Positions 4,928 through 59,230 of a stretch of 64,000 bases of DNA are shown piece after piece; position 1 is the first letter of the stretch, and each line of letters starts with the position of its first letter. Under the pieces are notes generated by a model. That model was not told the DNA's origin. It worked only from the letters and a program-made list of their open reading frames with translations, and did no database searches. Origin of the DNA: Lytechinus pictus (lineage: Eukaryota); NCBI RefSeq assembly GCF_037042905.1, contig NW_026974141.1:992001-1056000 (forward strand), written 5' to 3'. The position numbers and the translations under genes were made by a program.

Positions 4928-4999
4928 AAGAAGAAAAGATACGGCCACCAAAAAATCCGCCGACCGGATGCAACGAGGACTTGGATGATAGCTGTGATG
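4928..4999 (+). CDS. Gene A exon 4
   Basis: Acceptor ttttttcag; 72 nt, phase 1-1, EEEKIRPPKNPPTGCNEDLDDSCD; donor G|gtaacc; GC-richer island in an AT-rich intron. Confidence 0.7.
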
Positions 5000-6661: not shown

Positions 6662-6977
6662 TTAAATTCATTATCTCGTATCATTTCATATTCCATTTCA
6701 TATCATTCCTTATAGCCTTTTTTATCTCCTACTCACGATCGTTGACATTAACATCATCGCCATAATCATCACCATCATTATTACCACCACCGTCATCAAG
6801 ATCATCATCATCATTATCATCATCACAAACATCCACTCTAGTTCGTAACCGTTTTAAAGCAAAGTCTAATTTCAAACTAAAGCAGATGCTCGAGCATTGA
6901 CTTCCTAATTTTGACGCCATCTTTTTTACGTCTTTCTCTTGTGTGTCACTCGCACCAATCACGTACGTTCATCCCTC

Positions 6978-9900: not shown

Positions 9901-10332
9901 CTTATGAATGATGGAGAAAATAAGCTACCAACGTTACCAGGTCGGGAAAATTCTATTTAATGTATTAAGATATTTTTTAAAACAACAAAAAATTATGGGG
10001 ATATTGAAAATAAGGATTTTGAAATGCTATATAAAATTTACGCTATATTTTCATAAATTTTGGCATATTGTATCACTCATCAAAATGACTGGTAATTCGC
10101 TTTCTTACACACACTTGCTTATAATTTCGATATAGGTTGATACACCGATAGTCAATATAAATGATAAACATTCATAGTCTTACTAAATTTAAACGATTTC
10201 ATTAGTTTTTAGGATTTTAATATCGCAGACAATTTGGAGAGTGAGCAAGAAGATGCTCGTAAGCGTCGCTAACAAGACTGTTAGGCGACCTACCGCGAGA
10301 GGGCTTTTATAATGGCGGGCTCCACTGAGTTG
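6978..10332. mobile_element. Foldback-like non-autonomous element with ~1.2-kb imperfect inverted arms, in gene A intron 5
   Basis: CAACTCAGTG at 6978 pairs with CACTGAGTTG ending 10332. Colinear inverted similarity runs inward to accaggctctcgtgatt (about 8205) versus aatcacaagagcctggt (about 9135). No TSD or coding remnant seen. Confidence 0.65.
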
Positions 10333-10619
10333 ATACATAGCCTATAGGCGGTTCACGTACGTGCAATGAAACCGACTATCAAAGCTAATACATCACTTTG
10401 AATGGCGAATAATATTCGATTTGAGGTCCGTTTTGTTGAAGTGACTTGGTCATTAAATCAACATTTGGAACTGGGTTAAAGTTTTCTGCTTACTTTTCTT
10501 CTCTTCCCTTTCTTCTTCTTTCGTTCTTTTCTCTCTCTTCTTTCTTTTTATTTGGAAATTGTGTTTAATAAAACTTGCTCCTCTTGTCTCTTTTCTTCTC
10601 TCTTCTATTTCGAATGGAG

Positions 10620-10765: not shown

Positions 10766-11025
10766 NNNNNNNNNNNNNNNNNNNNNNNNNNNNNNNNNNN
10801 NNNNNNNNNNNNNNNNNNNNNNNNNNNNNNNNNNNNNNNNNNNNNNNNNNNNNNNNNNNNNNNNNNNNNNNNNNNNNNNNNNNNNNNNNNNNNNNNNNNN
10901 NNNNNNNNNNNNNNNNNNNNNNNNNNNNNNNNNNNNNNNNNNNNNNNNNNNNNNNNNNNNNNNNNNNNNNNNNNNNNNNNNNNNNNNNNNNNNNNNNNNN
11001 NNNNNNNNNNNNNNNNNNNNNNNNN
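10766..11025. other. Assembly gap (260 N) within a (GAT/GAC)n-like tract in gene A intron 6
   Basis: Run of N. Confidence 0.99.
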
Positions 11026-12984: not shown

Positions 12985-13457
12985 GGTTACACTTCGTAAT
13001 TCCGAAGGTTCGTAATTCCGAAGGTTCTTTATTCCGAAGGTTCGTAAATCCGAAACACGTAAATTGCCTATACCTCGATGTTCGTTAATCCGAAAACGTA
13101 AAAGGGTTCGTTAATCCGAACATTTGTGGCGTTATTCCGAAGGTTCGTTATTCCGAAGGTTCGATAATCCGAAAACAAAATTAGGTTCGATGTTCCGAAG
13201 GTTCGTTAATCCGAAAACGAAATAAGGTTCGTTGTTCCGAAGGTTCGTTAGTCCGAAAACGAAATAAGGTTCGTTAATCATTTAGTTTTCGGACTAACGA
13301 ACCTTCGGAATTACGAACCTCATTTCGTTTTCGGATTAACGAACCTTCGGAACTACGAACCTCACTTCGTTTTCGGACTATCGAACCTTCGGAATTACGA
13401 ACCTTCGGAAATACGAACCTTCGGAATAACGAAGCTTCGGAATTACGAATGTATGCG
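12985..13457. mobile_element. Non-autonomous element built from ttccgaaggttcg motifs, probably Mutator/MULE-like
   Basis: Imperfect TIRs ggttacacttcgtaattccgaa / ttcggaattacgaatgtatgcg; flanks attttact / attctact (8 bp, 1 mismatch); near-identical copy at 56416. Confidence 0.75.
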
Positions 13458-17443: not shown

Positions 17444-19766
17444 TTTATTTTTTTTTTTTTCAATTTGTTTCCCCTCCACAGGGATTTTATTATTATTCAA
17501 AACATAACAAGATATCTTTTCAATGACAAATCAAATTAATAACAACGAAATACAATACAACAGTAATTGTAACAAATATATAAATTGAACTGTCAGGTTA
17601 ACATAATAGTAAACAATTTAAGGAACAAGCAAGGAGTAAATGAACAATAATATTCATATGTATCATTGTACATGGAAAGTGAACTGAACAGATCACTTCA
17701 TGTAAACATGGCACGTAATTGAAACCATTTCTTTGTAAACTTTACCATTTTACAATTTGACTCTGCGATATATTTTTCATTCTTGAAATAATTCTGAAGT
17801 GCAAATTTGATATTATCAAAAACAGGTAATTGATGTTTTACTCTGGAAGTATAGATCATCTGTCGTATCACTATCAATAAACAATTTAATGCATAATTAC
17901 TTGAACCTCTTAAACCAAATAATTTTTCTTTATTAGAGAAAAAAATTCTATTTCCAGTTTTAAGAAATATCCATTGTTCAAACCTGTCCCATATATGTTT
18001 AATACATGTACATTCACAAATTAGATGAGTAACTGTTTCACGGTGTACATTACAAAAAGTACATTCTTTTTGTTGAGCTAAATTAATTTTAAACAATATT
18101 TCATTTGTATATAAAATATGTTGCATTATTTTGAACTGAAACCAACGTAAATTCACATCGGTAGTACAACTGAATCCAATAGAGCAATACGATTGCCATT
18201 GCTTGTCATTCATATCGAATATACACTTCCACTTAAGGAAACTTTTACATTCCACTTTTCTTTTCTTTTTAAGAATCGTATAGATGTGTAAACAACCTTT
18301 ATTATATTTCATAACAAGTGCTATTGTATCAGGGATAATAGGTTCTTGGAACTTGCTAAAGTGTGTGCCATTGCTAAAACCGTCTCTTATAGCATCACAT
18401 AATCCACGGTAAAAAATAAAATTTATTTGAACATTGTATTTTTCCTTAAGGTCATTCAAAGAGAGGAAATTGCCATGTACATCTAAAATATCATTAACAA
18501 AACGAACACCCCTATTATTTAGAGATCTACTGTGAATTGAGCTATTACCTATTTTGATAAAATCATTGTTCCATAAGGGTTGGCAAGGTATATCATTACA
18601 GTGCATAGATAACAGTGTGCTATACGCTAAGAACATTTCTTTCCAAAAAGGATTTTGAATTTCGTGTGCCAGTCTAAAAAAATAGCTATTTCCCATATAA
18701 AGATCCAAGTTTTGCGTTTTATGCAAAAAAGACTGAAAAAGACAAATAATATTACCGTCAATGGAACCGTTTATCATTTTTTTCATCCAAGAAATTTTCA
18801 ATGACTGGCAATGCAGATTTATGTCTATCATTTTTACTCCACCTTCAGAATAACTCTGAGACATTTGATTTCTACTTACTTTATCTGGTTTCTCTCCCCA
18901 TATGAATCTATGAAATTGGGAATTTACATCTTTTAGAAATAACTCACTTGGATTCGGGAGAGAAAGAATTAAGTAGTTCAATTTAGACACAAACAATGAC
19001 TTGACAACCGTAACTCTTCCAAGGACCGTCAGGTAACGTCTTAACCATGAAGTCATTTGACTTTTGATCTCTTTAAACTTTTCATTGTAATTATGCACCG
19101 TCATTTTCTGAAGATCTGTACAAAAATCTATACCTAAATATCTGAAGTATTCATCAAATACCCAATTCAAATTCCTATTGGCAAGAATACAGTCTTTCTT
19201 GTTCTTATATCCTCCAATCCATATTGCATGTGTCTTGGTTATATTAACAGTCAAACCTGATATTGTTTTATATTTTTCCAAGATGTCAAAAGCACTACTC
19301 AATTCTCTTTCTGAACCGTTTAATGTCAGAAGAGTGTCATCTGCATACTGTAATATTTTATGACATTTACCAGAGGGCATCCTCAAACCATCTATTGACG
19401 TTGATTGTCGAAACAAAACGCCAAGTATTTCAGCACATAATAGAAAAATATATGGAGACAATGGATCTCCTTGGCGACAGCCCCGCTCTATTGAAAATCT
19501 GGGAGACAGGTGTCCATTGATTAAAACACAAGATTGAGCATTTTCATAAAACACATCAAACCATTTAACAATGGTCGGACCAAATTTAAAGAAGTGTAGT
19601 ACATTGCGAATAAAGTCATGAGAAATTGAATCGAATGCCTTCTCAAAATCTATAAGTAACAATAAACCGGGAATATCGTTTAATTCAGTATATAATAATA
19701 TATCATATAACAAGCGGATGTTTTCTCCGATAAAGCGTCCGGACATAAACCCTTTCTGATTCTCAT
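17444..19766 (-). mobile_element. 5'-truncated L1/Tx1-clade non-LTR retrotransposon
   Basis: Poly(A) tail (T-run 17444-17460), short 3' UTR, TSD gtagtaga at 17436-17443 and 19767-19774. The empty site is visible in the sister MITE at about 20171. Confidence 0.9.
17698..19766 (-). CDS. LINE ORF2 fragment: reverse transcriptase plus C-terminal zf-RVT, endonuclease lost by truncation
   Basis: Motifs (E)NQKGFMSGR, LLIDFEKAFDS, GCRQGDPLSPYIF, QYADD, YLGI, CTFC...ETVTHLICEC; more than 680 codons uninterrupted. Confidence 0.92.
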
Positions 19767-20777
19767 GTAGTAGAATTTGATGCTAATATTGAAACTTGGA
19801 ATATCTTACTGTGTAATGTTCGAAATCATCGTACGAATACCTATGTTCAAATCTGTGACTATGCTATAATCCTTCTTAGAATAAAAGCAAATTTAATATC
19901 TAGTCTTAATGACGTCATAGCAGTCGTAAGATTGGCTACGATTTGAAACTAATTTGGCCTTTACTCGAAAATTAATGGCTTGCAATCTGTCAAAATGGTT
20001 ATATTAGTATTCTTTCAATTAATTTTAACCTCAATTAAAATGATAATGTTCCATTCACATTTTCAGAAAATTAGCAAAATGCGATTTGTTCCAAAATTGG
20101 ATCGCGAACAGTCGTAAGGTGTGCGGTGGCCTTTATACGATTGGTCTGCGACCCGATTTCGGAATAAAAAGTAGTAGAATTTGATGCTAATATTGAGATA
20201 TGGAATATCTTATTGTGTAATGTTCTAAATCAAATCTGTGACTATACTATCTAATAGAATAAAAGCAAATTCGGCATCTAATCGTAATGACGTCTAAGCT
20301 TTGAAAATAATTTGGCCTTTGCTAATAATAAAGGCTTGCAATCATCCAAAATTTTTATATTAATACCCTTTCAGTTGGTTCAAACTTCAAATAAAAAATT
20401 ATATTTTACATTCACATTTTCAGAAAATGTGCAAAATACGATTTGTTCCAACTTGAATCGGAGTGTGGACCAGTCTGTAGGTGTGCGGTGGTCTTAATAA
20501 TAACAAAACGAGATCGGGAGAGGGAGAGAGAGAAGGGGGTGGGGGAGACTCGAAAAAAAGAGAGAGGGGGATGGGGTTGAAGTATAGGCCCTACGGTTAT
20601 ACTTACATGACCAGAGAGGTATCGGGATGAAACGTTTTTATTAACAGATAAAATATTTTGAAATATTCGATTAGATATCGACCCATTCAACACCAATTTT
20701 TCGTTATATTCCTTCGGAAAAAAGATGCGGACGATAGGTCAATGCGGATTCTTGCGTCCACTTGCGGATAATCTTGC

Positions 20778-20945
20778 GAAAACGAAATAAGGTTCGTAAA
20801 TCCGAAGGTTCGACAGTCCGAAAACGAAATGAAGTTCGTTTATCCGAAGGTTCGTCAGTCCGAAAACGAAATGAGGTTCGTTTATCCGAAGGTTCGTTAG
20901 TCCGAAAACGAAATAAGGTTCGTTAATCTGAAAATGAAATAAGGT
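20778..20945. repeat. Partial copy of the ttccgaaggttcg element
   Basis: About four 39-bp units cgaaaacgaaat(a/g)aggttcgt...ccgaaggttcg, matching 13170-13280. Confidence 0.7.
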
Positions 20946-21449
20946 ATTAGAAGCGGGGGGGGGGGGGGGGGGGGCTTCCAAAACTTTTTTTCCAAAGCCC
21001 CTCCCCCCCACTTTGAAAAAGGCTTAAGCTCCTATGATTCTCAAGTTTGTTGAAAAAAAAAATTAACAACTGATATTTCCCTCTTCATTTCCTTTTCCCT
21101 TCCACTTTGATTTCGCTTCTGTTTCCTGTCCCATTTTTCCTTCTCTCTATCTCTCTTACTTCTATTTTTTTTGTTTCTTTCATTATGTTCTTTTATCACT
21201 CTCTTTCCTTTATCATTTTTTCTTTTCTGTTTCTGTATTTTCCTTCCCCTTTCGATTTCCCTCTTCCGCCCCCCCCCTCTTTCTCTCTCTCCCTCTTCCT
21301 ATTTCGTTTTCTCCTTTCATTTTGTTCACCCATTCTTCATTTTTTTAACTCTTATCTCTCTATCGCTTTCACTCGCTCTATCTGCTACCTTAATTTACTC
21401 AACTGCAAGAGAAATCATAATTTAAATACTTCTTGAGGTTAATTTACAA

Positions 21450-21455
21450 TTTATT
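21450..21455 (-). promoter_or_regulatory. Candidate poly(A) signal AATAAA of gene B
   Basis: tttatt on the + strand, about 35 nt past the TGA at 21490. Confidence 0.5.
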
Positions 21456-21489
21456 TACAATTATTTACAATTTCTTCAATGAAATGTTT

Positions 21490-24400
21490 TCAAGAGTGTC
21501 TTCTACGCCTTCGCCAACCAAAACAGCAAAGTCTTTTCCACCACTTCAGTCTCCTTCCATTAACGATTCTCTGGTCCGTGATATCCCCGATACTTTCCTT
21601 CTTGATATTGCCATCCTTTCCGCTCATCTTTATCTCCTCTTTAAAGTCTTGCAACTCTGGAACCTCCTGTTCTATTTCCTTCTTCTGCTTGTCCTCCTCC
21701 TCTAGCTTCACTTTCTCCATCCACATCTCATTCCAAAATGATTCGGCAAACTCTGTTGATTCCTCAAGCATTTCGGGCAGCTTCTGTTCATCGTCCACCT
21801 CTTCCTTCTCCTTGGTGAGGTTGTTCAATGAAGTGATCACCAATGCATCCTCCCCTGCCATCATCTTCTCCTCGAGCCCCATCTCATCTTTAGCTATCAG
21901 CTCTACCTTTCCTGTCTGAGCCATCTCCTCCCCTTCCATTAGCTCCAGCTCCTCCACCGGCTCTGTTCCCTGCCCTTCCACTGCAGTCATCTCTGCCATC
22001 TTCAGCTCCTCCTCCTCCATAGCCATCAGCTCTACATTCCCTGTCTCTACCTCCTCATCTTCCATTAGCTCTAGCTCCTCCACCAGCTCTGTTTCCAGCC
22101 CTTCCACTGCAGTCATCCCTGCAATCTTCAGCTCCTCCTTCTCCTCCTTAGCCATCAGCTCTACCTTTCCTGTCTCAACCTCTTCATCTTTCATTAGCTC
22201 CAGCTCCTCCATCGGCTCTGTTCCCTGCCCTTCCACTGCAGTCATCCCTGCAATCTTCAGCTCCTCCTCCGCCTCCTTAGCTGACAGCTCTGCCTTTCCT
22301 GTCTGAGCCATCTCCTCCCCTTCCATTAGCTCCAGCTCCTCCACCGGCTCTGTTCCCAGCCCTTCCACTGCAGTCATCTCTGCCATCTTTAGCTCCTCCT
22401 CCTCCATAGCCATCAGCTCTACATTCCCTGTCTCCACCTCCTCATCTTCCATTAGCTCTAGCTCCTCCACCAGCTCTGTTTCCAGCCCTTCCACTGCAGT
22501 CATCCCTGCAATCTTCAGCTCCTCCTTCTCCTCCTTAGCCATCAGCTCTACCTTTCCTGTCTCAACCTCTTCATCTTTCATTAGCTCCAGCTCCTCCATC
22601 GGCTCTGTTCCCTGCCCTTCAACTGCAGTCATCCCTGCAATCTTCAGCTCCTCCTCCGCCTCCTTAGCTGTCAGCTCTGCCTTTCCTGTCTGAGCAATCT
22701 CCTCCCCTTCCATTAGCTCCAGCTCCTCCACCGGCTCAGCTCCCAGCCCTTCTACTGCAGTCATCTCTGCCATCTTCAGCTCCTCCTCCTCCATAGCCAT
22801 CAGCCCTACATTCCCTGTCTCCACCTTCTCCCCTTCCATTAGCTCCAGCTCCTCCACCAGCTCTATTTTTCCAGCCCTTCCACTGCAGTCATCCCTGCAA
22901 TCTTCAGCTCCTCCTCCTTAGCCATCAGCTCTATCCTTCCTGTCTCAACCTCCTCATCTTCCATTAGCTCCAGCTCCTCCATCGGCTCTGTTCCCTGCCC
23001 TTCCACTGCAGTCATCCCTGCAATCTTCAGCTCCTCCTTCTCATCCTTAGCCATCAGCTCTACCTTCCCTGTCTCAACCTCTTCATCTTTCATTAGCTCC
23101 AGCTCCTCCACCAGCTCTGTTCCATGCCCTTCCACTGCAGTCATCCCTGCAATCTTCAGCTCCTCCTCCGCCTCCTTAGCTGTCAGCTCTGCCTTTCCTG
23201 TCTGAGCCATCTCCTCCCCTTCCATTAGCTCCAGCTCCTCCACCGGCTCTGTTCCCAGCCCTTCCACTGCAGTCATCTCTGCCATCTTTAGCTCCTCCTC
23301 CTCCATAGCCATCAGCTCTACATTCCCTGTCTCCACCTCCTCATCTTCCATTAGCTCTAGCTCCTCCACCAGCTCTGTTTCCAGCCCTTCCACTGCAGTC
23401 ATCCCTGCAATCTTCAGCTCCTCCTTCTCCTCCTTAGCCATCAGCTCTACCTTTCCTGTCTCAACCTCTTCATCTTTCATTAGCTCCAGCTCCTCCATCG
23501 GCTCTGTTCCCTGCCCTTCAACTGCAGTCATCCCTGCAATCTTCAGCTCCTCCTCCGCCTCCTTAGCTGTCAGCTCTGCCTTTCCTGTCTGAGCAATCTC
23601 CTCCCCTTCCATTAGCTCCAGCTCCTCCACCGGCTCAGCTCCCAACCCTTCTACTGCAGTCATCTCTGCCATCTTCAGCTCCTCCTCCTCCATAGCCATC
23701 AGCCCTACATTCCCTGTCTCCACCTTCTCCCCTTCCATTAGCTCCAGCTCCTCCACCAGCTCTATTTTTCCAGCCCTTCCACTGCAGTCATCCCTGCAAT
23801 CTTCAGCTCCTCCTCCTTAGCCATCAGCTCTATCCTTCCTGTCTCAACCTCCTCATCTTCCATTAGCTCCAGCTCCTCCATCGGCTCTGTTCCCTGCCCT
23901 TCCACTGCAGTCATCCCTGCAATCTTCAGCTCCTCCTTCTCATCCTTAGCCATCAGCTCTACCTTCCCTGTCTCAACCTCTTCATCTTTCATTAGCTCCA
24001 GCTCCTCCACCGGCTCTGTTCCATGCCCTTCCACTGCAGTCATCCCTGCAATCTTCAGCTCATCCTCCGCCTCCTTAGCTGTCAGCTCTGCCTTTCCTGT
24101 CTGAGCCATCTCCTCCCCTTCCATTAGCTCCAGCTCCTCCACCGGCTCTGTTCCCAGCCCTTCTACTGCAGTCATCTCTGCCATCTTCAGCTCCTCCTCC
24201 TCCATAGCCATCAGCTCTACCTTCCCTGTCTCCACCTTATCCCCTTCCATTAGCTCCAGCTCCTCCACCAGCTCTGTTTCCAGCCCTTCCACTGCAGTCA
24301 TCCCTGCAATCTTCAGCTCCTCCTCCTCCTCTTTAGCCATCAGCTCTATCTTTCCTGTCTCCACCTTCTCCCCTTCCATTAGCTCTAGCTCCTCCGCCAG

Positions 24401-27400
24401 CTCTGTTTCCAGCCCTTCCACTGCAGTCATCCCTGCAATCTTCAGCTCCTCCTCCTCCTCCTTAGCCATCAGCTCTATCTTTCCTGTCTCAACCTCCTCA
24501 TCTTCCATTAGCTCCAGCTCCTCCATCGGCTCTGTTCCCAGCCCTTCCACTGCGGTCATCCCTGCAATCTTCAGCTCCTCCTTCTCATCCTTAGCCATCA
24601 GCTCTACCTTACCTGTTTCCACCTTCTCCCCTTCCATTAGCTCTAGCTCCTCCGCCAGCTCTGTTTCCAGCCCTTCCACTGCAGTCATCTCTGCCATCTT
24701 CAGCTCCTCCTCCTCCATAGCCATCAGCTCTACCTTCCCTGTCTCCACCTTCTCCCCTTCCATTAGCTCCAGCTCCTCCACCAGCTCTGTTTCCAGCCCT
24801 TTCACTGCAGTCATCCCTGCAATCTTCAGCTCCTCCTCCTCCTCCTTAGCCATCAGCTCTATCTTTCCTGTCTCAACCTCCTCCCCTTCCATTAGCTCCA
24901 GCTCCTCCACCGGCTCTGTTCCCAGCCCTTCTACTGCAGTCATCTCTGCCATCTTCAGCTCCTCCTCCTCCATAGCCATCAGCTCTACCTTCCCTGTCTC
25001 CACCTTATCCCCTTCCATTAGCTCCAGCTCCTCCGCCAGCTCTGTTTCCAGCCCTTCCACTGCAGTCATCCCTGCAATCTTCAGCTGCTCCTCCTCCTCC
25101 TTAGCCATCAGCTCTATCTTTCCTGTCTGAGCCATCTCCTCCCCTTCCATTAGCTCCAGCTCCTCCACCGAATCTGCTCCCAGCCCTTCTACTGCAGTCA
25201 TCTCTGCCATCTTCAGCTCCTCCTCCTCCATAGCCATCAGCTCTACCTTCCCTGTCTCCACCTTCTCCCCTTCCATTAGCTCCAGCTCCTCCACCAGCTC
25301 TGTTTCCAGCCCTTCCACTGCAGTCATCCCTGCAATCTTCAGCTCCTCCTTCTCCTCCTTAGCCATCAGCTCTACATTCCCTGTCTCCACCTCCTCATCT
25401 TCCATTAGCTCTAGCTCCTCCACCAGCTCTGTTTCCAGCCCTTCCACTGCAGTCATCCCTGCAATCTTCAGCTCCTCCTTCTCCTCCTTAGCCATCAGCT
25501 CTACCTTTCCTGTCTCAACCTCTTCATCTTTCATTAGCTCCAGCTCCTCCATCGGCTCTGTTCCCTGCCCTTCAACTGCAGTCATCCCTGCAATCTTCAG
25601 CTCCTCCTCCGCCTCCTTAGCTGTCAGCTCTGCCTTTCCTGTCTGAGCAATCTCCTCCCCTTCCATTAGCTCCAGCTCCTCCACCGGCTCAGCTCCCAAC
25701 CCTTCTACTGCAGTCATCTCTGCCATCTTCAGCTCCTCCTCCTCCATAGCCATCAGCCCTACATTCCCTGTCTCCACCTTCTCCCCTTCCATTAGCTCCA
25801 GCTCCTCCACCAGCTCTATTTTTCCAGCCCTTCCACTGCAGTCATCCCTGCAATCTTCAGCTCCTCCTCCTTAGCCATCAGCTCTATCCTTCCTGTCTCA
25901 ACCTCCTCATCTTCCATTAGCTCCAGCTCCTCCATCGGCTCTGTTCCCTGCCCTTCCACTGCAGTCATCCCTGCAATCTTCAGCTCCTCCTTCTCATCCT
26001 TAGCCATCAGCTCTACCTTCCCTGTCTCAACCTCTTCATCTTTCATTAGCTCCAGCTCCTCCACCGGCTCTGTTCCATGCCCTTCCACTGCAGTCATCCC
26101 TGCAATCTTCAGCTCATCCTCCGCCTCCTTAGCTGTCAGCTCTGCCTTTCCTGTCTGAGCCATCTCCTCCCCTTCCATTAGCTCCAGCTCCTCCACCGGC
26201 TCTGTTCCCAGCCCTTCTACTGCAGTCATCTCTGCCATCTTCAGCTCCTCCTCCTCCATAGCCATCAGCTCTACCTTCCCTGTCTCCACCTTATCCCCTT
26301 CCATTAGCTCCAGCTCCTCCACCAGCTCTGTTTCCAGCCCTTCCACTGCAGTCATCCCTGCAATCTTCAGCTCCTCCTCCTCCTCTTTAGCCATCAGCTC
26401 TATCTTTCCTGTCTCCACCTTCTCCCCTTCCATTAGCTCTAGCTCCTCCGCCAGCTCTGTTTCCAGCCCTTCCACTGCAGTCATCCCTGCAATCTTCAGC
26501 TCCTCCTCCTCCTCCTTAGCCATCAGCTCTATCTTTCCTGTCTCAACCTCCTCATCTTCCATTAGCTCCAGCTCCTCCATCGGCTCTGTTCCCAGCCCTT
26601 CCACTGCGGTCATCCCTGCAATCTTCAGCTCCTCCTTCTCATCCTTAGCCATCAGCTCTACCTTACCTGTTTCCACCTTCTCCCCTTCCATTAGCTCTAG
26701 CTCCTCCGCCAGCTCTGTTTCCAGCCCTTCCACTGCAGTCATCTCTGCCATCTTCAGCTCCTCCTCCTCCATAGCCATCAGCTCTACCTTCCCTGTCTCC
26801 ACCTTCTCCCCTTCCATTAGCTCCAGCTCCTCCACCAGCTCTGTTTCCAGCCCTTTCACTGCAGTCATCCCTGCAATCTTCAGCTCCTCCTTCTCATCCT
26901 TAGCCATCAGCTCTACCTTACCTGTTTCCACCTTCTCCCCTTCCATTAGCTCTAGCTCCTCCGCCAGCTCTGTTTCCAGCCCTTCCACTGCAGTCATCTC
27001 TGCCATCTTCAGCTCCTCCTCCTCCATAGCCATCAGCTCTACCTTCCCTGTCTCCACCTTCTCCCCTTCCATTAGCTCCAGCTCCTCCACCGGCTCTGTT
27101 CCCAGCCCTTCTACTGCAGTCATCTCTGCCATCTTCAGCTCCTCCTCCTCCATAGCCATCAGCTCTACCTTCCCTGTCTCCACCTTATCCCCTTCCATTA
27201 GCTCCAGCTCCTCCGCCAGCTCTGTTTCCAGCCCTTCCACTGCAGTCATCCCTGCAATCTTCAGCTGCTCCTCCTCCTCCTTAGCCATCAGCTCTATCTT
27301 TCCTGTCTCAACCTCCTCATCTTCCATTAGCTCCAGCTCCTCCACCAGCTCTGTTCCCTGCCCTTCCACTGCAGTCATCCCTGCAATCTTCAGCTCCTCC

Positions 27401-30400
27401 TCCGCCTCCTTAGCTGTCAGCTCTGCCTTTCCTGTCTGAGCCATCTCCTCCCCTTCCATTAGCTCCAGCTCCTCCACCGGATCTGCTCCCAGCCCTTCTA
27501 CTGCAGTCATCTCTGCCATCTTCAGCTCCTCCTCCTCCATAGCCATCAGCTCTACCTTCCCTGTCTCCACCTTCTCCCCTTCCATTAGCTCCAGCTCCTC
27601 CACCAGCTCTGTTTCCAGCCCTTTCACTGCAGTCATCCCTGCAATCTTCAGCTCCTCCTCCTCCTCCTTAGCCATCAGCTCTATCTTTCCTGTCTCAACC
27701 TCCTCATCTTCCATTAGGTCCAGCTCCTCCATCGGCTCTGTTCCCTGCCCTTCCACTGCAGTCATCCCTGTAATCTTCAGCTCCTCCTTCTCATCCTTAG
27801 CCATCAGCTCTACCTTACCTGTTTCCACCTTCTCCCCTTCCATTAGCTCTAGCTCCTCCGCCAGCTCTGTTTCCAGCCCTTCCACTGCAGTCATCCCTGC
27901 AATCTTCAGCTCCTCCTCCTTAGCCATCAGCTCTATCTTTCCTGTCTCAACCTCCTCATCTTCCATTAGCTCCAGCTCCTCCACCGGCTCTGTTCCCTGC
28001 CCTTCCACTGCAGTCATCCCTGCAATCTTCAGCTCCTCCTCCGCCTCCTTAGCTGTCAGCTCTGCCTTTCCTGTCTGAGCCATCTCCTCCCCTTCCATTA
28101 GCTCCAGCTCCTCCACCAGCTCTGTTTCCAGCCCTTTCACTGCAGTCATCCCTGCAATCTTCAGCTCCTCCTCCTCCTTAGCCATCAGCTCTATCTTTCC
28201 TGTCTCAACCTCCTCATCTTCCATTAGGTCCAGCTCCTCCATCGGCTCTGTTCCCTGCCCTTCCACTGCAGTCATCCCTGCAATCTTCAGCTCCTCCTTC
28301 TCATCCTTAGCCATCAGCTCTACCTTACCTGTTTCCACCTTCTCCCCTTCCATTAGCTCTAGCTCCTCCGCCAGCTCTGTTTCCAGCCCTTCCACTGCAG
28401 TCATCCCTGCAATCTTCAGCTCCTCCTTCTCATCCTTAGCCATCAGCTCTACCTTACCTGTTTCCACCTTCTCCCCTTCCATTAGCTCCAGCTCCTCCAC
28501 CGGCTCTGTTCCCTGCCCTTCCACTGCAGTCATCCCTGCAATCTTCAGCTCCTCCTCCGCCTCCTTAGCTGTCAGCTCTGCCTTTCCTGTCTGAGCCATC
28601 TCCTCCCCTTCCATTAGCTCCAGCTCCTCCACCGGCTCTGCTCCCAGCCCTTCTACTGCAGTCATCTCTGCCATCTTCAGCTCCTCCTCCTCCATAGCCA
28701 TCAGCTCTACCTTCCATGTCTCCACCTTCTCCCCTTCCATTAGCTTCAGCTCCTCCACCAGCTCTGTTTCCAGCCCTTTCACTGCAGTCATCCCTGCAAT
28801 CTTCAGCTCCTCCTTCTCATCCTTAGCCATCAGCTCTACCTTACCTGTTTCCACCTTCTCCCCTTCCATTAGCTCTAGCTCCTCCGCCAGCTCTGTTTCC
28901 AGCCCTTCCACTGCAGTCATCCCTGCAATCTTCAGCTCCTCCTCCTCCTCCTTAGCCATCAGCTCTATCTTTCCTGTCTCAACCTCCTCATCTTCCATTA
29001 GGTCCAGCTCCTCCATCGGCTCTGTTCCCTGCCCTTCCACTGCAGTCATCCCTGCAATCTTCAGCTCCTCCTTCTCCTCCTTAGCCATCAGCTCTACCTT
29101 ACCTGTTTCCACCTTCTCCCCTTCCACTAGCTCTAGCTCCTCCGCCAGCTCTGTTTCCAGCCCTTCCACTGCAGTCATCCCTGCAATCTTCAGCTCCTCC
29201 TCCTCCTCCTTAGCTGTCAGCTCTGTCTTTCCTGTCTGAGCCATCTCCTCCCCTTCCATTAACTCCAGCTCCTCCACCGAATCTGCTCCCAGCCCTTCTA
29301 CTGCAGTCATCTCTGCCATCTTCAGCTCCTCCTCCTCCATAGCCATCAGCTCTACCTTCCCTGTCTCCACCTTCTCCCCTTCCATTAGCTCCAGCTCCTC
29401 CACCAGCTCTGTTTCCAGCCCTTCCACTGCAGTCATCCCTGCAATCTTCAGCTCCTCATCCTTAGCCATCAGCTCTATCTTTCCTGTCTTAGCAACCTCC
29501 TCATCTTCCATTAGCTCCAGCTCCTCCATCGGCTCTGTTCCCTGCCCTTCCACTGCAGCCATCTCTGTAATATTCAGCTCCTCCTCCGCCTCCTTAGCCG
29601 TCAGCTCTGCCTTTCCTGTCTCCACCTCCTCATCTTTCATTAGCTCCAGCTCCTCCACCGGCTCTGTTCCATGCCCTTCCACTGCAGTCATTCCTGCAAT
29701 CTTCAGCTCTTCCTCCTCCTCCTTAGCCATCAACTCTATCTTTCCTGTCTCAACCTCCTCATCTTCCATTAGGTCCAGCTCCTCCATCGGCTCTGTTACC
29801 TGCCCTTCCACTGCAGTCATCCCTGCAATCTTCAGCTCCTCCTCCGCCTCCTTAGCTGTCAGCTCTGCCTTTCCTGTCTGAGCCATCTCATCCCCTTCCA
29901 TTAGCTCCAGCTCCTCCACCGGCTCTGTTCCCAGCCCTTCTACTGCAGTCATCTCTGCCATATTCAGCTCCTCCTCCTCCATAGCCATCAGCCCTACCTT
30001 CCCTGTCTCCACCTTCTCCCCTTCCATTAGCTCCAGCTCCTCCACCAGCTCTGTTTCCAGCCCTTCCACTGCAGTCATCCCTGCAATATTCAGCTCCTCC
30101 TCCTCCTCCTTAGCCATCAGCTCTATCTTTCCTGTCTCCACCTTCTCCCCTTCCATTAGCTCCAGCTCCTCCATCGGCTCTGTTCCCTGCCCTTCCACTG
30201 CAGTCATCCCTGCAATCTTCAGCTCCTCCTTCTCATCCTTAGCCATCAGCTCTACCTTACCTGTTTCCACCTTCTCCCCTTCCATTAGCTCTAGCTCCTC
30301 CGCCAGCTCTGTTTCCAGCCCTTCCACTGCAGTCATCCCTGCAATCTTCAGCTCCTCCTCCTCCTCCTTAGCCATCAGCTCTATCTTTCCTGTCTCAACC

Positions 30401-32830
30401 TCCTCATCTTCCATTAGCTCCAGCTCCTCCACCGGCTCTGTTCCCTGCCCTTCCACTGCAGTCATCCCTGCAATCTTCAGCTCCTCCTCCGCCTCCTTAG
30501 CTGTCAGCTCTGCCTTTCCTGTCTGAGCCATCTCCTCCCCTTCCATTAGCTCCAGCTCCTCCACCAGCTCTGTTTCCAGCCCTTTCACTGCAGTCATCCC
30601 TGCAATCTTCAGCTCCTCCTCCTCCTCCTTAGCCATCAGCTCTATCTTTCCTGTCTCAACCTCCTCATCTTCCATTAGCTCCAGCTCCTCCATCGGCTCT
30701 GTTCCCTGCCCTTCCACTGCAGTCATCCCTGCAATCTTCAGCTCCTCCTTCTCATCCTTAGCCATCAGCTCTACCTTACCTGTTTCCACCTTCTCCCCTT
30801 CCATTAGCTCTAGCTCCTCCGCCAGCTCTGTTTCCAGCCCTTCCACTGCAGTCATCCCTGCAATCTTCAGCTCCTCCTCCTCCTCCTTAGCCATCAGCTC
30901 TATCTTTCCTGTCTCAACCTCCTCATCTTCCATTAGCTCCAGCTCCTCCACCGGCTCTGTTCCCTGCCCTTCCACTGCAGTCATCCCTGCAATCTTCAGC
31001 TCCTCCTCCTCCTCCTTAGCCATCAGCTCTATCTTTCCTGTCTCAACCTCCTCATCTTCCATTAGCTCCAGCTCCTCCATCGGCTCTGTTCCCAGCCCTT
31101 CCACTGCGGTCATCCCTGCAATCTTCAGCTCCTCCTTCTCATCCTTAGCCATCAGCTCTACCTTACCTGTTTCCACCTTCTCCCCTTCCATTAGCTCTAG
31201 CTCCTCCGCCAGCTCTGTTTCCAGCCCTTCCACTGCAGTCATCTCTGCCATCTTCAGCTCCTCCTCCTCCATAGCCATCAGCTCTACCTTCCCTGTCTCC
31301 ACCTTCTCCCCTTCCATTAGCTCCAGCTCCTCCACCAGCTCTGTTTCCAGCCCTTTCACTGCAGTCATCCCTGCAATCTTCAGCTCCTCCTCCTCCTCCT
31401 TAGCCATCAGCTCTATCTTTCCTGTCTCAACCTCCTCATCTTCCATTAGCTCCAGCTCCTCCATCGGCTCTGTTCCCTGCCCTTCCACTGCAGTCATCCC
31501 TGCAATCTTCAGCTCCTCCTCCGCCTCCTTAGCTGTCAGCTCTGCCTTTCCTGTCTGAGCCATCTCCTCCCCTTCCATTAGCTCCAGCTCCTCCACCGGC
31601 GCTGCTCCGAGCCCTTCTACTGCAGTCATCTCTGCCATCTTCAGCTCCTCCTCCTCCATAGCCATCAGCTCTACCTTCCCTGTCTCCACCTTCTCCCCTT
31701 CCATTAGCTCCAGCTCCTCCACCAGCTCTGTTTCCAGCCCTTTCACTGCAGTCATCCCTGCAATCTTCAGCTCCTCCTTCTCATCCTTAGCCATCAGCTC
31801 TACCTTACCTGTTTCCACCTTCTCCCCTTCCATTAGCTCTAGCTCCTCCGCCAGCTCTGTTTCCAGCCCTTCCACTGCAGTCATCCCTGCAATCTTCAGC
31901 TCCTCCTCCTCCTCCTTAGCCATCAGCTCTATCTTTCCTGTCTCAACCTCCTCATCTTCCATTAGCTCCAGCTCCTCCACCGGCTCTGTTCCCAGCCCTT
32001 CCACTGCAGTCATCCCTGCAATATTCAGCTCCTCCTCCTCCTCCTTAGCCATCAGCTCTATCTTTCCTGTCTTAACCTCCTCATCTTCCATTAGCTCCAG
32101 CTCCTCCATCGGCTCTGTTCCCTGCCCTTCCACTGCAGTCATCCCTGCAATCTTCAGCTCCTCCTTCTCATCCTTAGCCATCAGCTCTATCTTTCCTGTC
32201 TTCACCTTCTCCCCTTCCATTAGCTCCAGCTCCACCACCGGCTCTGTTCCCTGCCCTTCCACTGCAGTCATCTCTGTAATCTCCAGCTCCTCCTCCGCCT
32301 CCTTAGCCGTCAGCTCTGTCTTTCCTGTCTCCACCTCCTCATCTTTCATTAGCTCCTCCACCACTGCCTCTGTTTCCAGCCATTCCTCTGTATTAATATC
32401 TGCAGCCTTCAGTTCCTCCTTTAGCTCTTCCTTCATGTCCTTCTCTATCTCCACCTTCGCCTCCTCTGTTTCCATCTCTTCCTTCTCATTTGAGTACTCT
32501 ACTTTCATCACTACCTGCTCTTCTGCCAGCTCCTCCTCCTTCTTCTCCGCTTCCAACTTCTCCACCATCTCCTCCTCTGTATCCACCTTCTGCTCGGCCT
32601 TCATCTCCTGCTGTGTCCCCTCCCCCTTTGTCTCCAGCCCCCGTATTCCCTCTTCCTCCGATTCTTTCCTGCATCTGATTTCTTGTCCATTCGTCACCTC
32701 TTCTCCTTGCTCTATCAGACACTTGACAAAGCCGTTATTCAGATTTGTCGGAATGTCATACAAAATATATACGCATTCCAGGCAAGAACCTTCTCAAGCT
32801 CCTGACGAAATCTCGGCACCACACGATTTG
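21490..32830 (-). CDS. Gene B exon 2: giant Glu/Met-rich tandem-repeat protein, frame-disrupted (possible pseudogene or recoded gene)
   Basis: Track ORFs 32763-25816, 25810-23762, 23756-22863 and 22857-21490 are one repeat reading separated by identical +2 junctions. Unique N- and C-terminal regions. Repeat length variation is otherwise in whole codons. Confidence 0.7.
21880..32390. repeat. Coding minisatellite, roughly 80 units of about 123-129 bp with higher-order duplications
   Basis: Unit TAVEGLETELVEELELMEGEKVETGKVELMAMEEEELKMAEM and variants; a ctgcag in nearly every unit; marker junctions spaced 2054 and 899 bp apart. Confidence 0.95.
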
Positions 32831-34525: not shown

Positions 34526-36336
34526 GCAGCCGTGTATCGATTAATATTACTTTGTTTTACATAGATACGTATAAATACAAAAAAAAACCTGTGCAAGTAG
34601 GCTTACATAATATAACAATATCTTAAATCAAATAAGTGCTAATAATGGAATACTTACACTCAAACTTAAATTCATTCAATGTAGGAGCACCACTTATTTT
34701 TAAAGGTATATCATTCCAGGATCTGGACCAGTATATCTTATTGACCTATATAATGGGCTAAGGTAGTTAGCGGGTTTGATAAATGTACTAATTTGTTGAG
34801 ATTCTCGTAGGATATTATGAATAAATGAATTCAAAAGGAACATTTTATGATCAAATATTATTGGGAATTGGCGATAGTGAAACCTAAACATAAACAAACA
34901 ATTTGAAATATATGTATATCATCAATTTTTAAACTTTGAAACGGTTAAAGATTGTATTCAATATGAGTCCTAACAATTCCTCTTTATGACAGTTTATCCA
35001 AAATTAAAGATAAGAATAAAGCTAAGAAGTCTGACTGTTCGGACAACCCCTTAAAAAAACAGCTTGGAGCAGCCGATTGGGGAAAATGTGCATGATTGAC
35101 CCCCCGGCCCCCTTATTGGCGAAAGCTCGATCCACATCTGTAAAATAAAATGTGTATATTAAAATGTATAGACATATGAATTTAATGTGAATAAAAGTGT
35201 GCCCCCCATTCCCAAAAGCTGACTACGATGGCTGCGGATGAGGTTTTGCCCCGCCCTAGTAAAAAAGGGTGTTTGAGGTCCAAACAATCAACCCCCCCCC
35301 CGCAGAGCGATTTTTGTGTGTATAGGTTTATAAGTGGTAAACATCAAGAATGGATCTGTTAGGACATTTTGAACTCGAAAAGCATTAACCAGCCCCTATA
35401 GCGATATTTGATTTGATAACTTCTATCGTTATCGTAGATTGTTGAATGCATTTATATTTTCTTTGTTCGATGTTCAGTAGTTTATTTTGTTAAGTTGTAA
35501 TTATTGTAGACATGCTAAGTTTGGTCCTGGACCTTTGTAACATGTACGTACATGTGTCTATGTTTAAACCGGATGAATAAAATGAATTATTTGCAGGACT
35601 AGCGCAATGAGAGATAATTATGAACATGATGAGCTAGCTTCGCTTCGCACTTGCATTATTCGATGTATCCTTTTCATGAGTCACTAAATGCAGTCCTAAC
35701 ATGTTCCTTTTCTGGTCAGTATTTATTTCAGCTCGCACTCCGCGCTCGTGTTCTTCAGTTAGATGCAGATCTTTTTAATGATTGCAAAATTAACTGCTCA
35801 GAATGTTTTATTTTCATTTCTTATTGAAATTTCTAAAAGTCTGAGCTTGCTATCCACGCTCGCAACACCTCCCAAGGATGCCCTTTTAACAGTAATTGAC
35901 CAAAAAACGAGATTTACAACTTCGAACAGCTTTGATTTTTTTTTCCAATTATATAACCGCTCGCTCGTTACACTCCCTCGCGAAACATATATGAAACTCG
36001 AATACCTATCTTACCATAATCAGAAATCACTTAAAAATGCTTTGCTCTATTTAATTACTATGAAACTCACAATGACTTCACGCAGATGATAATCTCGTGG
36101 TGAAAGTATCACCAAAATGCCAATTTTTATATGCCATTTTTGGATTTGCCTTCCAGATATGATCCAAACAAAAATTCGGGTAAGATTCGATCATTGCGCA
36201 AGACACTTGCGTACGTACGTACCGGAGCGGTACGTACGTACACGTTGGATCATGCATATGCTGCGCTGCGTGCTCTTTAATCTTGCATCACATCATCAAT
36301 ATATTTCACATCCATCGCACACTGCTGAACAAAAAA

Positions 36337-36495
36337 ATGGCGAAGAGCATTGCGATCATCGACTTTGATTGCTTTCGTTTAGATACAGAAGTAACTGACC
36401 AGAAGAAATTCGAAAAGCTTGTTGATGAAGTCCATGATGCGTTGACAAAGGTGGGGTTTATGTACCTCATAAACCATGGAATTCCAACAGAAAAG
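36337..36495 (+). CDS. Gene C exon 1: 2-oxoglutarate/Fe(II)-dependent dioxygenase, DIOX_N / IPNS-like
   Basis: MAKSIAIIDF...VHDALTKVGFMYLINHGIPTEK matches the IPxID...GFxYLxNHGI signature; donor AAG|gtgagt, phase 0. Confidence 0.9.
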
Positions 36496-37056
36496 GTGAG
36501 TAGAATCGGGGGTGTACCGTGTAATTCTTTATCATGGGGTCGTGCTGCGGAAATTGAGAAGCGATACCACGGGTACGGTACCGGTACCCGGGTGTACGGG
36601 TGGGAGAGACGTGAGAGAGGCCCGCAAAATGCTCTTGCCTTGGGTCAAGATCTAGGCCTATACTTAGTTTTAGCCTGGAGGCTCCTGGAGAGTAAAAATC
36701 AGCCTACTATAGGATGGGGGGTCGGGTGTACGCGATGTGCGTGCTGTCGCCAAGCGGAAGACAAAGAAATCAAGATTGAAGATGGCGACGTAAAACACGG
36801 CCGTAACTTGGCGTAACTCGTAAGCTCTTCCCATCTTTTCAAATTTCATAACATTTTTCTCATTTTTTTAATGAATTCTTCTTTAAAAACTAAATCGATA
36901 TCGCAGAAATGTTGGAAATGAAGTTGAACCCCATGTACATGATTTAGGGCTAGATATTTCAGAGCCAGAGCTGAGGGAAAGTAGAATTAGTAGTAGAAAT
37001 CTCGGGGGCGAAAGTTTCAGGTTTTGTGGCCGTACGTGCATGACTTGCCTTAGTCT

Positions 37057-52300: not shown

Positions 52301-52395
52301 GCACCCCTCCCACCCTGTTTCTCCCCCTGTGAGGGACTTGGCTTGGCATCTTTCTATTCTAATAAACACTCCCCCCTCCCCTCCCCTCACTCAAT
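49390..52395. repeat. C-rich minisatellite, 22 units of about 126-140 bp, at the start of gene C intron 3
   Basis: Unit ...ctccatcctgacacctctatgacactcatcctgtctctccctagcacccctcccaccctgtttct(a/c)cccctgtgag(t/g)gacttggcttggcatctttctat(a/t)ctaataaacac... Confidence 0.95.
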
Positions 52396-52417
52396 CCTGT
52401 TACACCCAGACACTTCT

Positions 52418-56415: not shown

Positions 56416-56903
56416 GGTTACACTTCGTAATTCCAAAGGTTCTTTATTCCGAAGGTTCGTAATTCCGAAACACGTAAATTGCCTATACCTCGATGTTCGT
56501 TTATCCGAAAACGTAAAAGGGTTCGTTAATCCGAACATTTGTGGCGTTATTCCGAAGGTTCGTTTTTCCGAAGGTCGATAATCGAAAACGAAATAAGGTT
56601 CGATGTTCCGAAGGTTCGTTAATCCAAAAACGAAATAAGGTTTGTTGTTCCGAAGGTTCGTTAGTTCGAAAACGAAATAAGGTTCGTTAATCATTTAGTT
56701 TTCGGACTAACGAACCTTTAGAATTACGAACCTCATTTCGTTTTCGGAGTAACGAACCTTCGGAATTACGAACCTTATTTCGTTTTCAGATTAACGAACC
56801 TTCGGAATTACGATCCTTCGGAATTACTAACCTTCGTAAATACGAACCTTCGGAATAACCGAACCTTCGGAATAACGAAGCTTCGGAATTACGAATGTAT
56901 GCG
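56416..56903. mobile_element. Second full copy of the ttccgaaggttcg (MULE-like) element
   Basis: Colinear with 12985-13457; perfect 9-bp TSD acactccct (56407-56415, 56904-56912). Confidence 0.82.
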
Positions 56904-59008: not shown

Positions 59009-59230
59009 GGAGTGTGTGTCCCAGTGGATTAGTCTCCGGACTTTGAAACAGAGGGTCGTGGGTTTGAATCCCAGCCATGGCGTAATTTCCTTCGGCAACA
59101 AATTTATCCACATTGTGCTGCACTCGACCCAGGTGAGGTGAAATTGTGAATGGGTACCCGGTAGGATATTTCTTCAACGCTTTACCGCCTATTAATATGG
59201 CGGCTCAGCTACAGCCGGGGTAATAATATA
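59009..59230 (+). mobile_element. tRNA-derived SINE
   Basis: A-box-like tcccagtggattag, B-box-like ggtttgaatccc, then body tgctgcactcgacccaggtg...aatgggtacc and an AT-rich tail. Confidence 0.7.

What the first reader, a model, noticed from the sequence alone, without database searches (positions are those of the whole stretch)
22855..25830. Three identical GAA-AAA-TAG junctions in the giant repeat ORF, each repairable by a -1 shift
Seen: the normal repeat reads GGG CTG GAA ACA GAG CTG GTG. At three places (stops ending 25816, 23762, 22863 on the - strand) it reads GGG CTG GAA AAA TAG AGC TG, i.e. two extra A plus a C>T change. Slipping -1 on G_GAA_AAA gives ATA GAG CTG GTG (IELV), back in the repeat frame. 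Established: -1 ribosomal frameshifts use X_XXY_YYZ heptamers (here GGA-AAA-A, an imperfect XXX), and A-runs can also promote polymerase slippage. Inference: if recoded, the locus would make a ladder of acidic proteins (about 2.3k, 3.0k, 3.3k and 3.75k aa), and only the longest would carry the C-terminal anchor. The simpler and probably likelier explanation is one inactivating mutation copied by the 2054- and 899-bp duplications. I see no obvious downstream stimulatory hairpin. The linked substitution and three-fold identity argue against random homopolymer sequencing error.
Basis: partly seen in the sequence, partly recalled or inferred. Interest (0 to 1): 0.8.

Follow-up and report, generated by a model that had tools for sequence, protein, structure and literature searches.

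The report
One frameshift lesion copied by repeat duplication
The three identical GAA-AAA-TAG breaks in this sea-urchin repeat ORF are one mutation copied by recent duplications inside an apparently unconstrained, probably pseudogenic 129-bp array, so I see an ordinary lesion and no support for a programmed frameshift.

Summary
CTGGAAAAATAGAGCTGG occurs exactly three times on the minus strand, at 25827, 23773 and 22874. Each copy adds 2 nt and an in-frame TAG to the otherwise open frame of an 82-unit, 129-bp (41-44 codon) acidic tandem array at 21883-32420.

The three are not independent. Junctions 1 and 2 lie inside the longest exact repeat of the array (1532 bp, offset 2054). Junctions 2 and 3 share about 1.1 kb at 97-100%.

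A sister copy of the whole locus lies 13.7 Mb away on the same scaffold, inverted, at 90-98% identity. It is either an uncollapsed haplotype or a large duplication. It carries the same junction three times in diverged flanks. It also has five ordinary in-frame stops (TGA x3, TAG x2) and further frameshifts.

Both copies share a 1-nt deletion that cuts the family's conserved N-terminal motif off from the array frame. The Lytechinus variegatus orthologue has only about five degenerate units and is itself full of stops.

I found no stimulatory RNA structure downstream of the junction. No RNA holder was listed and the one RNA run laid gave no reads. Contigs of three other DNA samples show only the normal form at the site.

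Verdict: one lesion spread by array dynamics. The scan had not noted this on other DNA.

The parts
21883..32420 (-). Tandem array of about 82 units of 129 bp (41-44 codons). It is acidic (E/L/M/K/G-rich), with one frame free of stops except at the three junctions.
   Evidence: TRF (period 129, 82 copies, 86% matches); frame scan; unit list
25810..25827 (-). Junction 1: CTGGAAAAATAGAGCTGG, with TAG at 25818-25816 ending the 2315-codon ORF
23756..23773 (-). Junction 2: the same 18-mer, with TAG at 23764-23762
22857..22874 (-). Junction 3: the same 18-mer, with TAG at 22865-22863
25360..26891 (-). Copy A of the longest exact repeat in the array (1532 bp). It contains junction 1.
   Evidence: offset 2054
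23306..24837 (-). Copy B of the 1532-bp exact repeat. It contains junction 2.
22285..23112 (-). Block around junction 3 that repeats the block around junction 2 at offset 899. It includes exact runs of 366 and 461 bp and is 97-100% identical over about 1.1 kb.
21490..21900 (-). Unique C-terminal tail with the family motif RRLKWWKRLCCFGWRRRRRHS and stop TGA at 21492-21490. It is in the same frame as the first ORF piece. AATAAA-type signals follow within about 40 nt.
32762..32830 (-). Start of the giant exon (acceptor AG at 32832-32831), encoding the family motif ANRVVPRFRQELEKVLAWNAYIF. The T4 run at 32765-32762 is one T short of the intact paralogues, so this motif is out of frame with the array. 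The sister copy shares this lesion.

Best explanation
The locus is the giant last exon of a Lytechinus-type sea-urchin gene. The gene belongs to a small, uncharacterised family of acidic proteins with a conserved N-terminal motif and a conserved basic, Cys- and Trp-rich C-terminal tail.

In this lineage the internal 43-codon repeat behaves as a minisatellite. It has grown from about five units, as seen in the L. variegatus orthologue, to about 82 here, and it is being reshuffled by unequal recombination or conversion.

One complex mutation in one unit replaced C with AAT, turning GAA ACA GAG into GAA AAA TAG AG. That created a +2 frameshift with an immediate TAG. Block duplications of about 0.9 and 2.05 kb then carried that unit to three places.

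I see nothing that decodes it. Translation, if the RNA is made at all, would end at the first TAG. The array looks unconstrained and is most likely a pseudogene. Its long open frame would then be a by-product of recent amplification of a stop-free unit.

Shown:
- the identity and extent of the duplicated blocks;
- the same lesion, plus other lesions, in the sister copy;
- the shared N-terminal frameshift;
- the broken orthologue;
- the absence of a downstream RNA structure.

Inferred:
- pseudogene status;
- the order of events;
- the absence of any recoding.
For: (1) Junctions 1 and 2 share 100% identity from -1000 to +400 and lie in the longest exact repeat of the array, 1532 bp at offset 2054. 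Junctions 2 and 3 are 97-100% identical from -400 to +700. The array average is 86%.

(2) All six junction units, three here and three in sister copy L007, follow the same rare 41-codon unit (..MAKEEELKIA). This points to a single origin.

(3) L007 holds the same 18-mer at 6683, 7198 and 7575. It also has in-frame TGA at 2903, 3539 and 4961, in-frame TAG at 5180 and 8222, and two further frameshifts before the tail. The TGA at 2903 and the TGA at 4961 are themselves one lesion copied at offset 2058. Ordinary nonsense lesions are therefore amplified in the same way.

(4) Both copies have TATATATTTT-GTATGAC where the open paralogues on C20 and C17 keep the frame. This separates the conserved N-terminal motif from the array frame.

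(5) The colinear L. variegatus orthologue has about five degenerate units, in-frame TAG/TAA at 9596, 9866 and 9962, and frameshifts.

(6) Variation among units shows no coding signature. Distinct variants by codon position are 21/15/27 against 23/17/23 expected. Synonymous variants number 21 against 18.8 expected.

(7) 68% of the array lies in exact repeats of 200 bp or more, so its openness needs no selection.

(8) The 133 nt from the junction onward fold no better than shuffles (z = -0.29) and are the same sequence as in normal units.

(9) No RNA holder was listed for the array or the unique tail. No reads out of 12.9 million of one RNA run were laid.
Against: - Apart from the three junctions, the window's own array and its 136-codon unique tail have no other stop or frameshift over 11 kb. 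A poly(A) signal follows the stop. The copy therefore died recently or may still make a truncated product.
- The heptamer G_GAA_AAA followed by a stop is a plausible slippery context (PMC5009743).
- Both copies carry exactly three junctions, so the tail returns to the frame of the first piece. I read this as coincidence, but it is unexplained.
- Expression could not really be tested. One RNA run gave no reads, and the organism's presence in that run is unverified.
- Whether the sister copy is an allele or a paralogue is undecided.
Confidence: 0.85

Rival explanations
1. Programmed -1 ribosomal frameshifting at G_GAA_AAA before the TAG at each junction. It would give a ladder of acidic proteins of which only the longest carries the conserved tail.
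For: - The heptamer fits X_XXY_YYZ with the tolerated G_GA variant (PMC5009743).
- A 0-frame stop directly follows it.
- A -1 slip restores the repeat frame (IELV), as seen in the shifted ORFs.
- The sequence downstream of each junction is still open.
- The 18-mer is identical in all six copies.
Against: - There is no stimulatory structure: z = -0.29, and the sequence is the same as downstream of normal units.
- The six copies trace to one mutation, so their identity is not conservation.
- The sister copy is broken by five ordinary stops that no slip can mend.
- The N-terminal frameshift is shared by both copies.
- The orthologue lacks the junction and is broken.
- Three serial shifts would leave a vanishing yield of the full product.
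- No RNA evidence was found.
Confidence: 0.03
2. Assembly or polishing artefact. A false or single-copy variant was painted onto several near-identical units, or the array was mis-expanded by the assembler.
For: - In Logan contigs of three DNA runs from three samples, the three changed letters (25818-25820) have zero cover. Contigs stop at 25817 or start at 25821, as the normal form would.
- 1.5 kb of exact repeat inside a tandem array is a hard case for assemblers.
Against: - The change is complex (C replaced by AAT), not a homopolymer slip.
- It stands at six places in two loci whose flanks differ.
- The three runs hold only 5-14% of the sampled words of this stretch, so they are other individuals or a diverged population. 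Contigs show presence, not absence.
- The half of the unit downstream of the junction is itself poorly covered in them, and not covered at all in X7.
Confidence: 0.07
3. Truncating but still functional allele. The gene is expressed from an internal ATG (first in-frame ATG at 32604) and makes an acidic repeat protein of about 2260 aa that ends at the first TAG and lacks the tail. The remaining 4.3 kb would serve as 3' UTR in the same exon, which on general principles would escape exon-junction-dependent decay.
For: - The 2315-codon piece is open.
- All lesions lie within one terminal exon with a poly(A) signal after the old stop.
- Repeat number in such proteins is often free to vary.
Against: - The conserved N-terminal motif is out of frame in both copies.
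- The sister copy stops at codon 907 of its first open stretch and again repeatedly after that.
- There is no codon-position signature among units.
- No RNA holder was listed.
Confidence: 0.08

Closest known systems
Variant repeats spread by unequal crossing-over or conversion in coding minisatellites (VNTRs). From my own knowledge, an example is the single-unit frameshift insertion in the human MUC1 VNTR.
   Same: - A tandem array with a unit length divisible by three lies inside an exon.
- One unit acquires a frameshift.
- Higher-order blocks are duplicated with their lesions.
- Long stretches are identical between copies.
   Different: Here the lesion-bearing unit has been amplified to three copies per locus. 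The gene around it appears dead. No shifted-frame product is known to matter.
Canonical eukaryotic or viral -1 programmed ribosomal frameshift signals: X_XXY_YYZ plus a downstream pseudoknot or hairpin (review PMC5009743)
   Same: A heptamer G_GAA_AAA in the 0 frame with a perfect A-site slip. G_GA is a documented tolerated X_XX.
   Different: - There is no downstream stimulator.
- Nothing is conserved beyond identity by descent.
- The signal is repeated three times in series.
- The host ORF is broken elsewhere in the sister copy and the orthologue.
Euplotes stop-triggered frameshifting at AAA-TAR (PMC12275403, PMC10235951, PMC4759687)
   Same: The literal motif AAA-TAG arose by an insertion inside a coding frame. 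This is how Euplotes sites are reported to arise.
   Different: - In Euplotes AAA-TAR gives +1, and +2 sites prefer NTA-TAR. This site needs +2 or -1.
- The mechanism is reported for that ciliate genus.
- The organism here is a sea urchin.
Transcriptional slippage sites on long A or T runs (review PMC5009743)
   Same: The junction contains an A run, and one added A in the RNA would restore the frame.
   Different: The run is only A5. From my own knowledge, known slippage sites use about 6-7 or more (viral polymerases) or 9 or more (cellular polymerases). The TAG would also remain in the RNA sequence, merely out of frame.

Membership tests
-1 programmed ribosomal frameshift signal | Slippery heptamer X_XXY_YYZ in the incoming frame | tested here: met
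   CTG GAA AAA TAG gives G_GAA_AAA in the ORF frame. X_XX is G_GA, imperfect but documented as tolerated (PMC5009743).
-1 programmed ribosomal frameshift signal | Stable stimulatory structure (pseudoknot or hairpin) a few nucleotides downstream | tested here: not met
   Over 133 nt from the junction the MFE is -18 kcal/mol and z = -0.29 against shuffles. Only a 5-bp hairpin forms, and normal units have it too.
-1 programmed ribosomal frameshift signal | Signal and both reading frames kept by selection in relatives | tested here: not met
   - The six copies descend from one event.
- The sister copy has five ordinary in-frame stops and more frameshifts.
- The L. variegatus orthologue has no junction and several stops.
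-1 programmed ribosomal frameshift signal | A shifted protein product is made | not testable with these tools
   No RNA holder was listed. The one RNA run laid gave 0 reads. No proteomic or Ribo-seq tool is available.
Transcriptional slippage site | Long homopolymeric run | tested here: not met
   The run is A5 only, at 25823-25819.
Euplotes-type stop-triggered frameshift | AAA-TAR motif giving a +1 shift | tested here: not met
   The motif AAA-TAG is present, but the frame needed is +2 or -1. In Euplotes AAA-TAR is the +1 motif and +2 sites prefer NTA-TAR. The organism is a sea urchin.
Minisatellite variant repeat spread by block duplication | Copies of the variant embedded in long, near-identical higher-order blocks, spaced by whole units | tested here: met
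   - A 1532-bp exact repeat at offset 2054 (16 units + 2 nt).
- About 1.1 kb at 97-100% at offset 899 (7 units + 2 nt).
- A TGA lesion in L007 is copied the same way.
Pseudogene (unconstrained former coding exon) | Several independent ORF-breaking lesions, shared between copies or differing between species, and no codon-position signature | tested here: met
   - Shared 1-nt deletion at 32765-32762.
- Junctions in both copies.
- Extra stops in L007.
- A different indel at the same N-terminal spot and stops in L. variegatus.
- Variants by codon position 21/15/27 against 23/17/23 expected.
Pseudogene (unconstrained former coding exon) | No functional transcript or protein | tested here: inconclusive
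   No RNA holder was listed and one RNA run gave 0 reads. The organism's presence in that run was not verified, and tissues are unknown.

The most novel reading that the evidence does not exclude
The window's copy is still transcribed and translated from an internal start. Low-level -1 (or +2) slippage at GAA-AAA-TAG, a motif created by insertion as in Euplotes, lets a small fraction of ribosomes continue. An animal cell would then make a ladder of acidic repeat proteins, with the conserved KWWK-LCCFGW tail only on the rarest. The return to the original frame after exactly three junctions in both copies would then not be a coincidence.
Probability: 0.03. Interest if true: 0.6.

Novelty: already known. 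Interest (0 to 1): 0.12.

Why it matters
Its value is mainly as a caution. A 2315-codon open frame and three "conserved" recoding-like motifs can arise with no selection at all, when a stop-free unit and a lesion-bearing unit of a former coding repeat are amplified by minisatellite dynamics. It also flags two points for annotation and assembly quality control. First, this locus should not be annotated as a 3750-aa protein with corrected frameshifts. Second, a block of at least 200 kb of this scaffold is present twice in inverted order. The small sea-urchin gene family with the invariant RRxKWWKxLCCFGW tail is uncharacterised and may merit a separate look.

Tried and rejected
- The search for homologous proteins with the 2315-aa ORF and with the C20 paralogue found nothing. 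Acidic low-complexity words swamped the candidates.
- Pfam gave nothing for the N- and C-terminal unique parts or for the paralogues.
- The ESM Atlas feature search of the C17 paralogue gave no usable hit.
- The look-up of encoding contigs gave no record for the L. pictus protein and no DNA for the ENA 97-aa relative.
- A codon-position and synonymous/nonsynonymous test among units had little power: 63 distinct variants, and about 3.6 stop-creating variants expected. It neither proves nor excludes past coding constraint.
- The tail comparison between the two copies (2 synonymous, 3 nonsynonymous differences) has no power.
- Read laying was limited to a 136-bp junction-centred stretch, because the tool turns away long repeats. 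It used contigs of three DNA runs, none of which crosses the changed letters, and one RNA run with no reads. This is reported as not seen, not as absent. It cannot tell polymorphism from divergence of those samples.
- The idea that three +2 shifts restoring the frame could allow read-through was rejected. Each junction has its own TAG in the incoming frame, and the shifted frames have 2-5 stops per unit.
- A mini-intron around the TAG was considered and rejected. The upstream A-run is not a pyrimidine tract and I saw no evident donor.
Full report
**What is there**

The window is AT-rich eukaryotic DNA (about 32-41% G+C outside the two G+C-rich tandem arrays and one richer 2-kb bin) with sparse ORFs. 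Earlier notes of this scan and my own protein hits place it in a Lytechinus-type sea urchin.

On the minus strand, 21883-32420 is a tandem array of about 82 units of 129 bp, with 86% matches. One frame of the array has no stop at all. The other two frames carry 2-5 stops per unit. Units are 41-44 codons long and fall into a few subtypes.

The array is flanked in frame by a unique acidic N-terminal stretch. On the other side is a unique 136-codon tail ending RRLKWWKRLCCFGWRRRRRHS, then a stop at 21492-21490, then AATAAA-type signals within about 40 nt. A polypyrimidine tract and AG at 32832-32831 mark the start of the exon.

**The observation**

CTGGAAAAATAGAGCTGG occurs exactly three times, at 25827, 23773 and 22874, spaced 2054 and 899 bp. 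The normal GGAAACAGAG occurs 34 times. The TAGs are the ends of the 2315-, 682- and 297-codon ORFs, and a 455-codon ORF follows.

The change replaces C with AAT. That adds 2 nt and a stop in the incoming frame. Each junction moves the repeat frame by +2, so after three junctions the tail is again in the frame of the first piece.

**The three sites are one event**

Junctions 1 and 2 are 100% identical from 1000 nt upstream to 400 nt downstream. Junctions 2 and 3 are 97-100% identical from -400 to +700. The longest exact repeat in the whole array is 1532 bp at offset 2054, and it contains junctions 1 and 2. The next longest is 472 bp.

The offsets equal 16 and 7 units plus the 2 extra nt. The lesion-bearing unit was therefore carried along by very recent block duplications. 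Overall, 68% of the array lies within exact repeats of at least 200 bp. The array is young or continually homogenised, and an open frame over 10 kb needs no selection once the amplified unit is stop-free.

**A sister copy**

Searching the window's own genome with the tail's relative found a second locus on the same scaffold, at G000:C21:14742500-14752499 (L007). It also found shorter paralogues on C20 and C17, whose exon reads open from its start to the tail.

L007 has the same architecture: N-terminal stretch, an array of at least 57 units by motif count, and the tail. The whole window, and at least 200 kb around it, is mirrored there in inverted order at 90-98% identity, with transposon insertions present in one copy only. 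Sea urchins are highly heterozygous (my own knowledge), so this may be an uncollapsed second haplotype rather than a true duplication. I could not decide between the two.

L007 holds the same 18-mer three times, at 6683, 7198 and 7575, spaced 515 and 377 bp. The flanks of those copies have diverged from each other and from the window's. Even so, all six junction units follow the same rare 41-codon unit ending MAKEEELKIA. The lesion therefore arose once, before the two loci separated or with exchange between them. Its copy number then grew separately in each.

**The sister copy is plainly decayed**

Besides the junctions, L007 has in-frame TGA at 2903, 3539 and 4961, in-frame TAG at 5180 and 8222, and two further frameshifts before the tail. 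The TGAs at 2903 and 4961 share 465 nt upstream and 643 nt downstream at about 97-99% identity. They are a second example of a lesion copied by a block duplication of about 2.06 kb. No slippery motif accompanies them.

**Both copies are also broken at the 5' end**

The open paralogues read ...FLAWDEYTYLYEIQTD... and ...FLAFDEYIFLYDIQES... in one frame from the exon start. The window and L007 both have TATATATTTT-GTATGAC, one T short. As a result ANRVVPRFRQELEKVLAWNAYIF and LYDIPTNLNNGFV... are in different frames, and a TGA at 32796-32794 closes the array frame upstream.

The L. variegatus locus L001 is colinear with the window through the gene at 72-82% identity. It has a different indel at the same spot, only about five degenerate units, in-frame TAG/TAA at 9596, 9866 and 9962, frameshifts, and a 310-bp insertion in the tail. 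NCBI's models for these loci are short fragments of 143 and 270 aa.

**No sign of coding constraint or of a recoding signal**

I counted 63 distinct unit variants. By codon position they number 21/15/27, against 23/17/23 expected from the observed mutation spectrum. Synonymous, nonsynonymous and stop-creating variants (scored on the consensus background) number 21, 41 and 1, against 18.8, 40.5 and 3.6 expected. Length differences among units are multiples of three, but they lie largely in GAG runs, where triplet slippage is expected anyway.

The 133 nt from the junction onward fold no better than shuffled sequence (z = -0.29) and are the ordinary unit sequence.

The heptamer G_GAA_AAA is acceptable by the literature, since G_GA is tolerated in several viruses (PMC5009743). 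It is the only element of a -1 signal present. The literal AAA-TAG recalls Euplotes, but there AAA-TAR gives +1 and +2 sites prefer NTA-TAR (PMC12275403). An A5 run is too short for known transcriptional slippage (my own knowledge).

**Reads**

No listed run holds more than 14% of the sampled words of 21300-26000. No RNA holder was listed for that stretch or for the unique tail.

The reads tool turns away long repeats, so I laid only a 136-bp junction-centred stretch. Its nearest other unit differs by 7 edits, and I set likeness to 97%. In the contigs of three DNA runs from three samples, the three changed letters (25818-25820) have zero cover. Pieces end at 25817 or begin at 25821, exactly as the normal form would.

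One RNA run gave no reads among 12.9 million read. Contigs show presence, not absence, and these samples are evidently not the assembled individual. I therefore record only that the junction was not seen elsewhere. This weakly favours a non-fixed lesion or an artefact, and it does not support a conserved signal.

**Conclusion**

The three junctions are real in the assembly. They are one frameshift-plus-stop mutation multiplied by higher-order duplication in a minisatellite-like former coding exon.

The gene copy in the window is most likely a young pseudogene. At best it is a truncated allele. Its sister copy and its L. variegatus orthologue are clearly broken. Programmed frameshifting is not supported; I put it at about 3%.

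One detail remains unexplained. Both copies carry exactly three junctions, which restores the tail's frame. I treat this as coincidence, because each junction carries its own stop.

Noticed in passing
window 1-64000 and G000:C21:0.92-1.126 Mb versus G000:C21:14.658-14.895 Mb: At least 200 kb around the window is present a second time on the same scaffold, 13.7 Mb away and inverted. Identity is 90-98%, and some transposon insertions are present in one copy only. It is either an uncollapsed haplotype placed by scaffolding or a large inverted segmental duplication.
   Followed up: partly
window 21493-21900 (-); L007:9205-9612; L009:8243-9859 (G000:C20); L011:24-1265 (-) (G000:C17); P0001, P0003: A small sea-urchin gene family without any Pfam match. 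Members are acidic proteins whose large exon starts with ANxVVPKFQxxLxxFLAxDEY..LYxIQ and ends with an invariant RRxKWWKxLCCFGW..R.R tail. On C20 (539 codons) and C17 (414 codons) this exon is open from its start to the tail. The function is unknown; the paired Cys might be a lipidation site.
   Followed up: partly
window 6960-10363 (next to the N run 10766-11025): A 3.4-kb element with many 99-100% identical copies on at least 10 other contigs. It has internal inverted homology (7021-8116 versus 9223-10286, about 79%). It looks like a very young, probably active, mobile element and is absent from the sister locus.
   Followed up: no
window 59224-63190: A repeat of about 4 kb with dozens of copies at 88-95% identity genome-wide and one 99% copy on C3. 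It is absent from the sister locus.
   Followed up: no
window 17698-19746 (-): A 682-codon ORF with RVT_1 and zf-RVT domains, a LINE-type reverse transcriptase fragment. Its length equals that of the 682-codon repeat piece by coincidence only.
   Followed up: partly
window 13140-13404, 20777-20932, 56555-56688: Short arrays of a 42-bp unit (AAGGTTCGTT..CGAAAACGAAAT) in both orientations. At 13140-13404 they sit as adjacent inverted arrays, which looks like a foldback or MITE-like element.
   Followed up: no
L007:8882-9231 versus window about 21874: The window copy lacks about 350 bp between the array and the tail that the sister copy retains. L. variegatus encodes corresponding residues there (..VEAEE/KLTTQE.KKDEK.EAGE..). 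The ORF stays open across this deletion.
   Followed up: partly
L007:2903 and 4961: In the sister copy a GGA-to-TGA nonsense unit (..EDEEAVET*) has itself been duplicated at offset 2058, with about 1.1 kb of shared flank. This is the same behaviour as the junction.
   Followed up: yes
window 36283-36816 (+) and 49393-52399: A non-haem dioxygenase N-terminal domain (DIOX_N) is encoded divergently upstream of the repeat gene. A 140-bp, 22-copy C-rich minisatellite lies further on; another first-stage note (s1-329245) concerns it.
   Followed up: no
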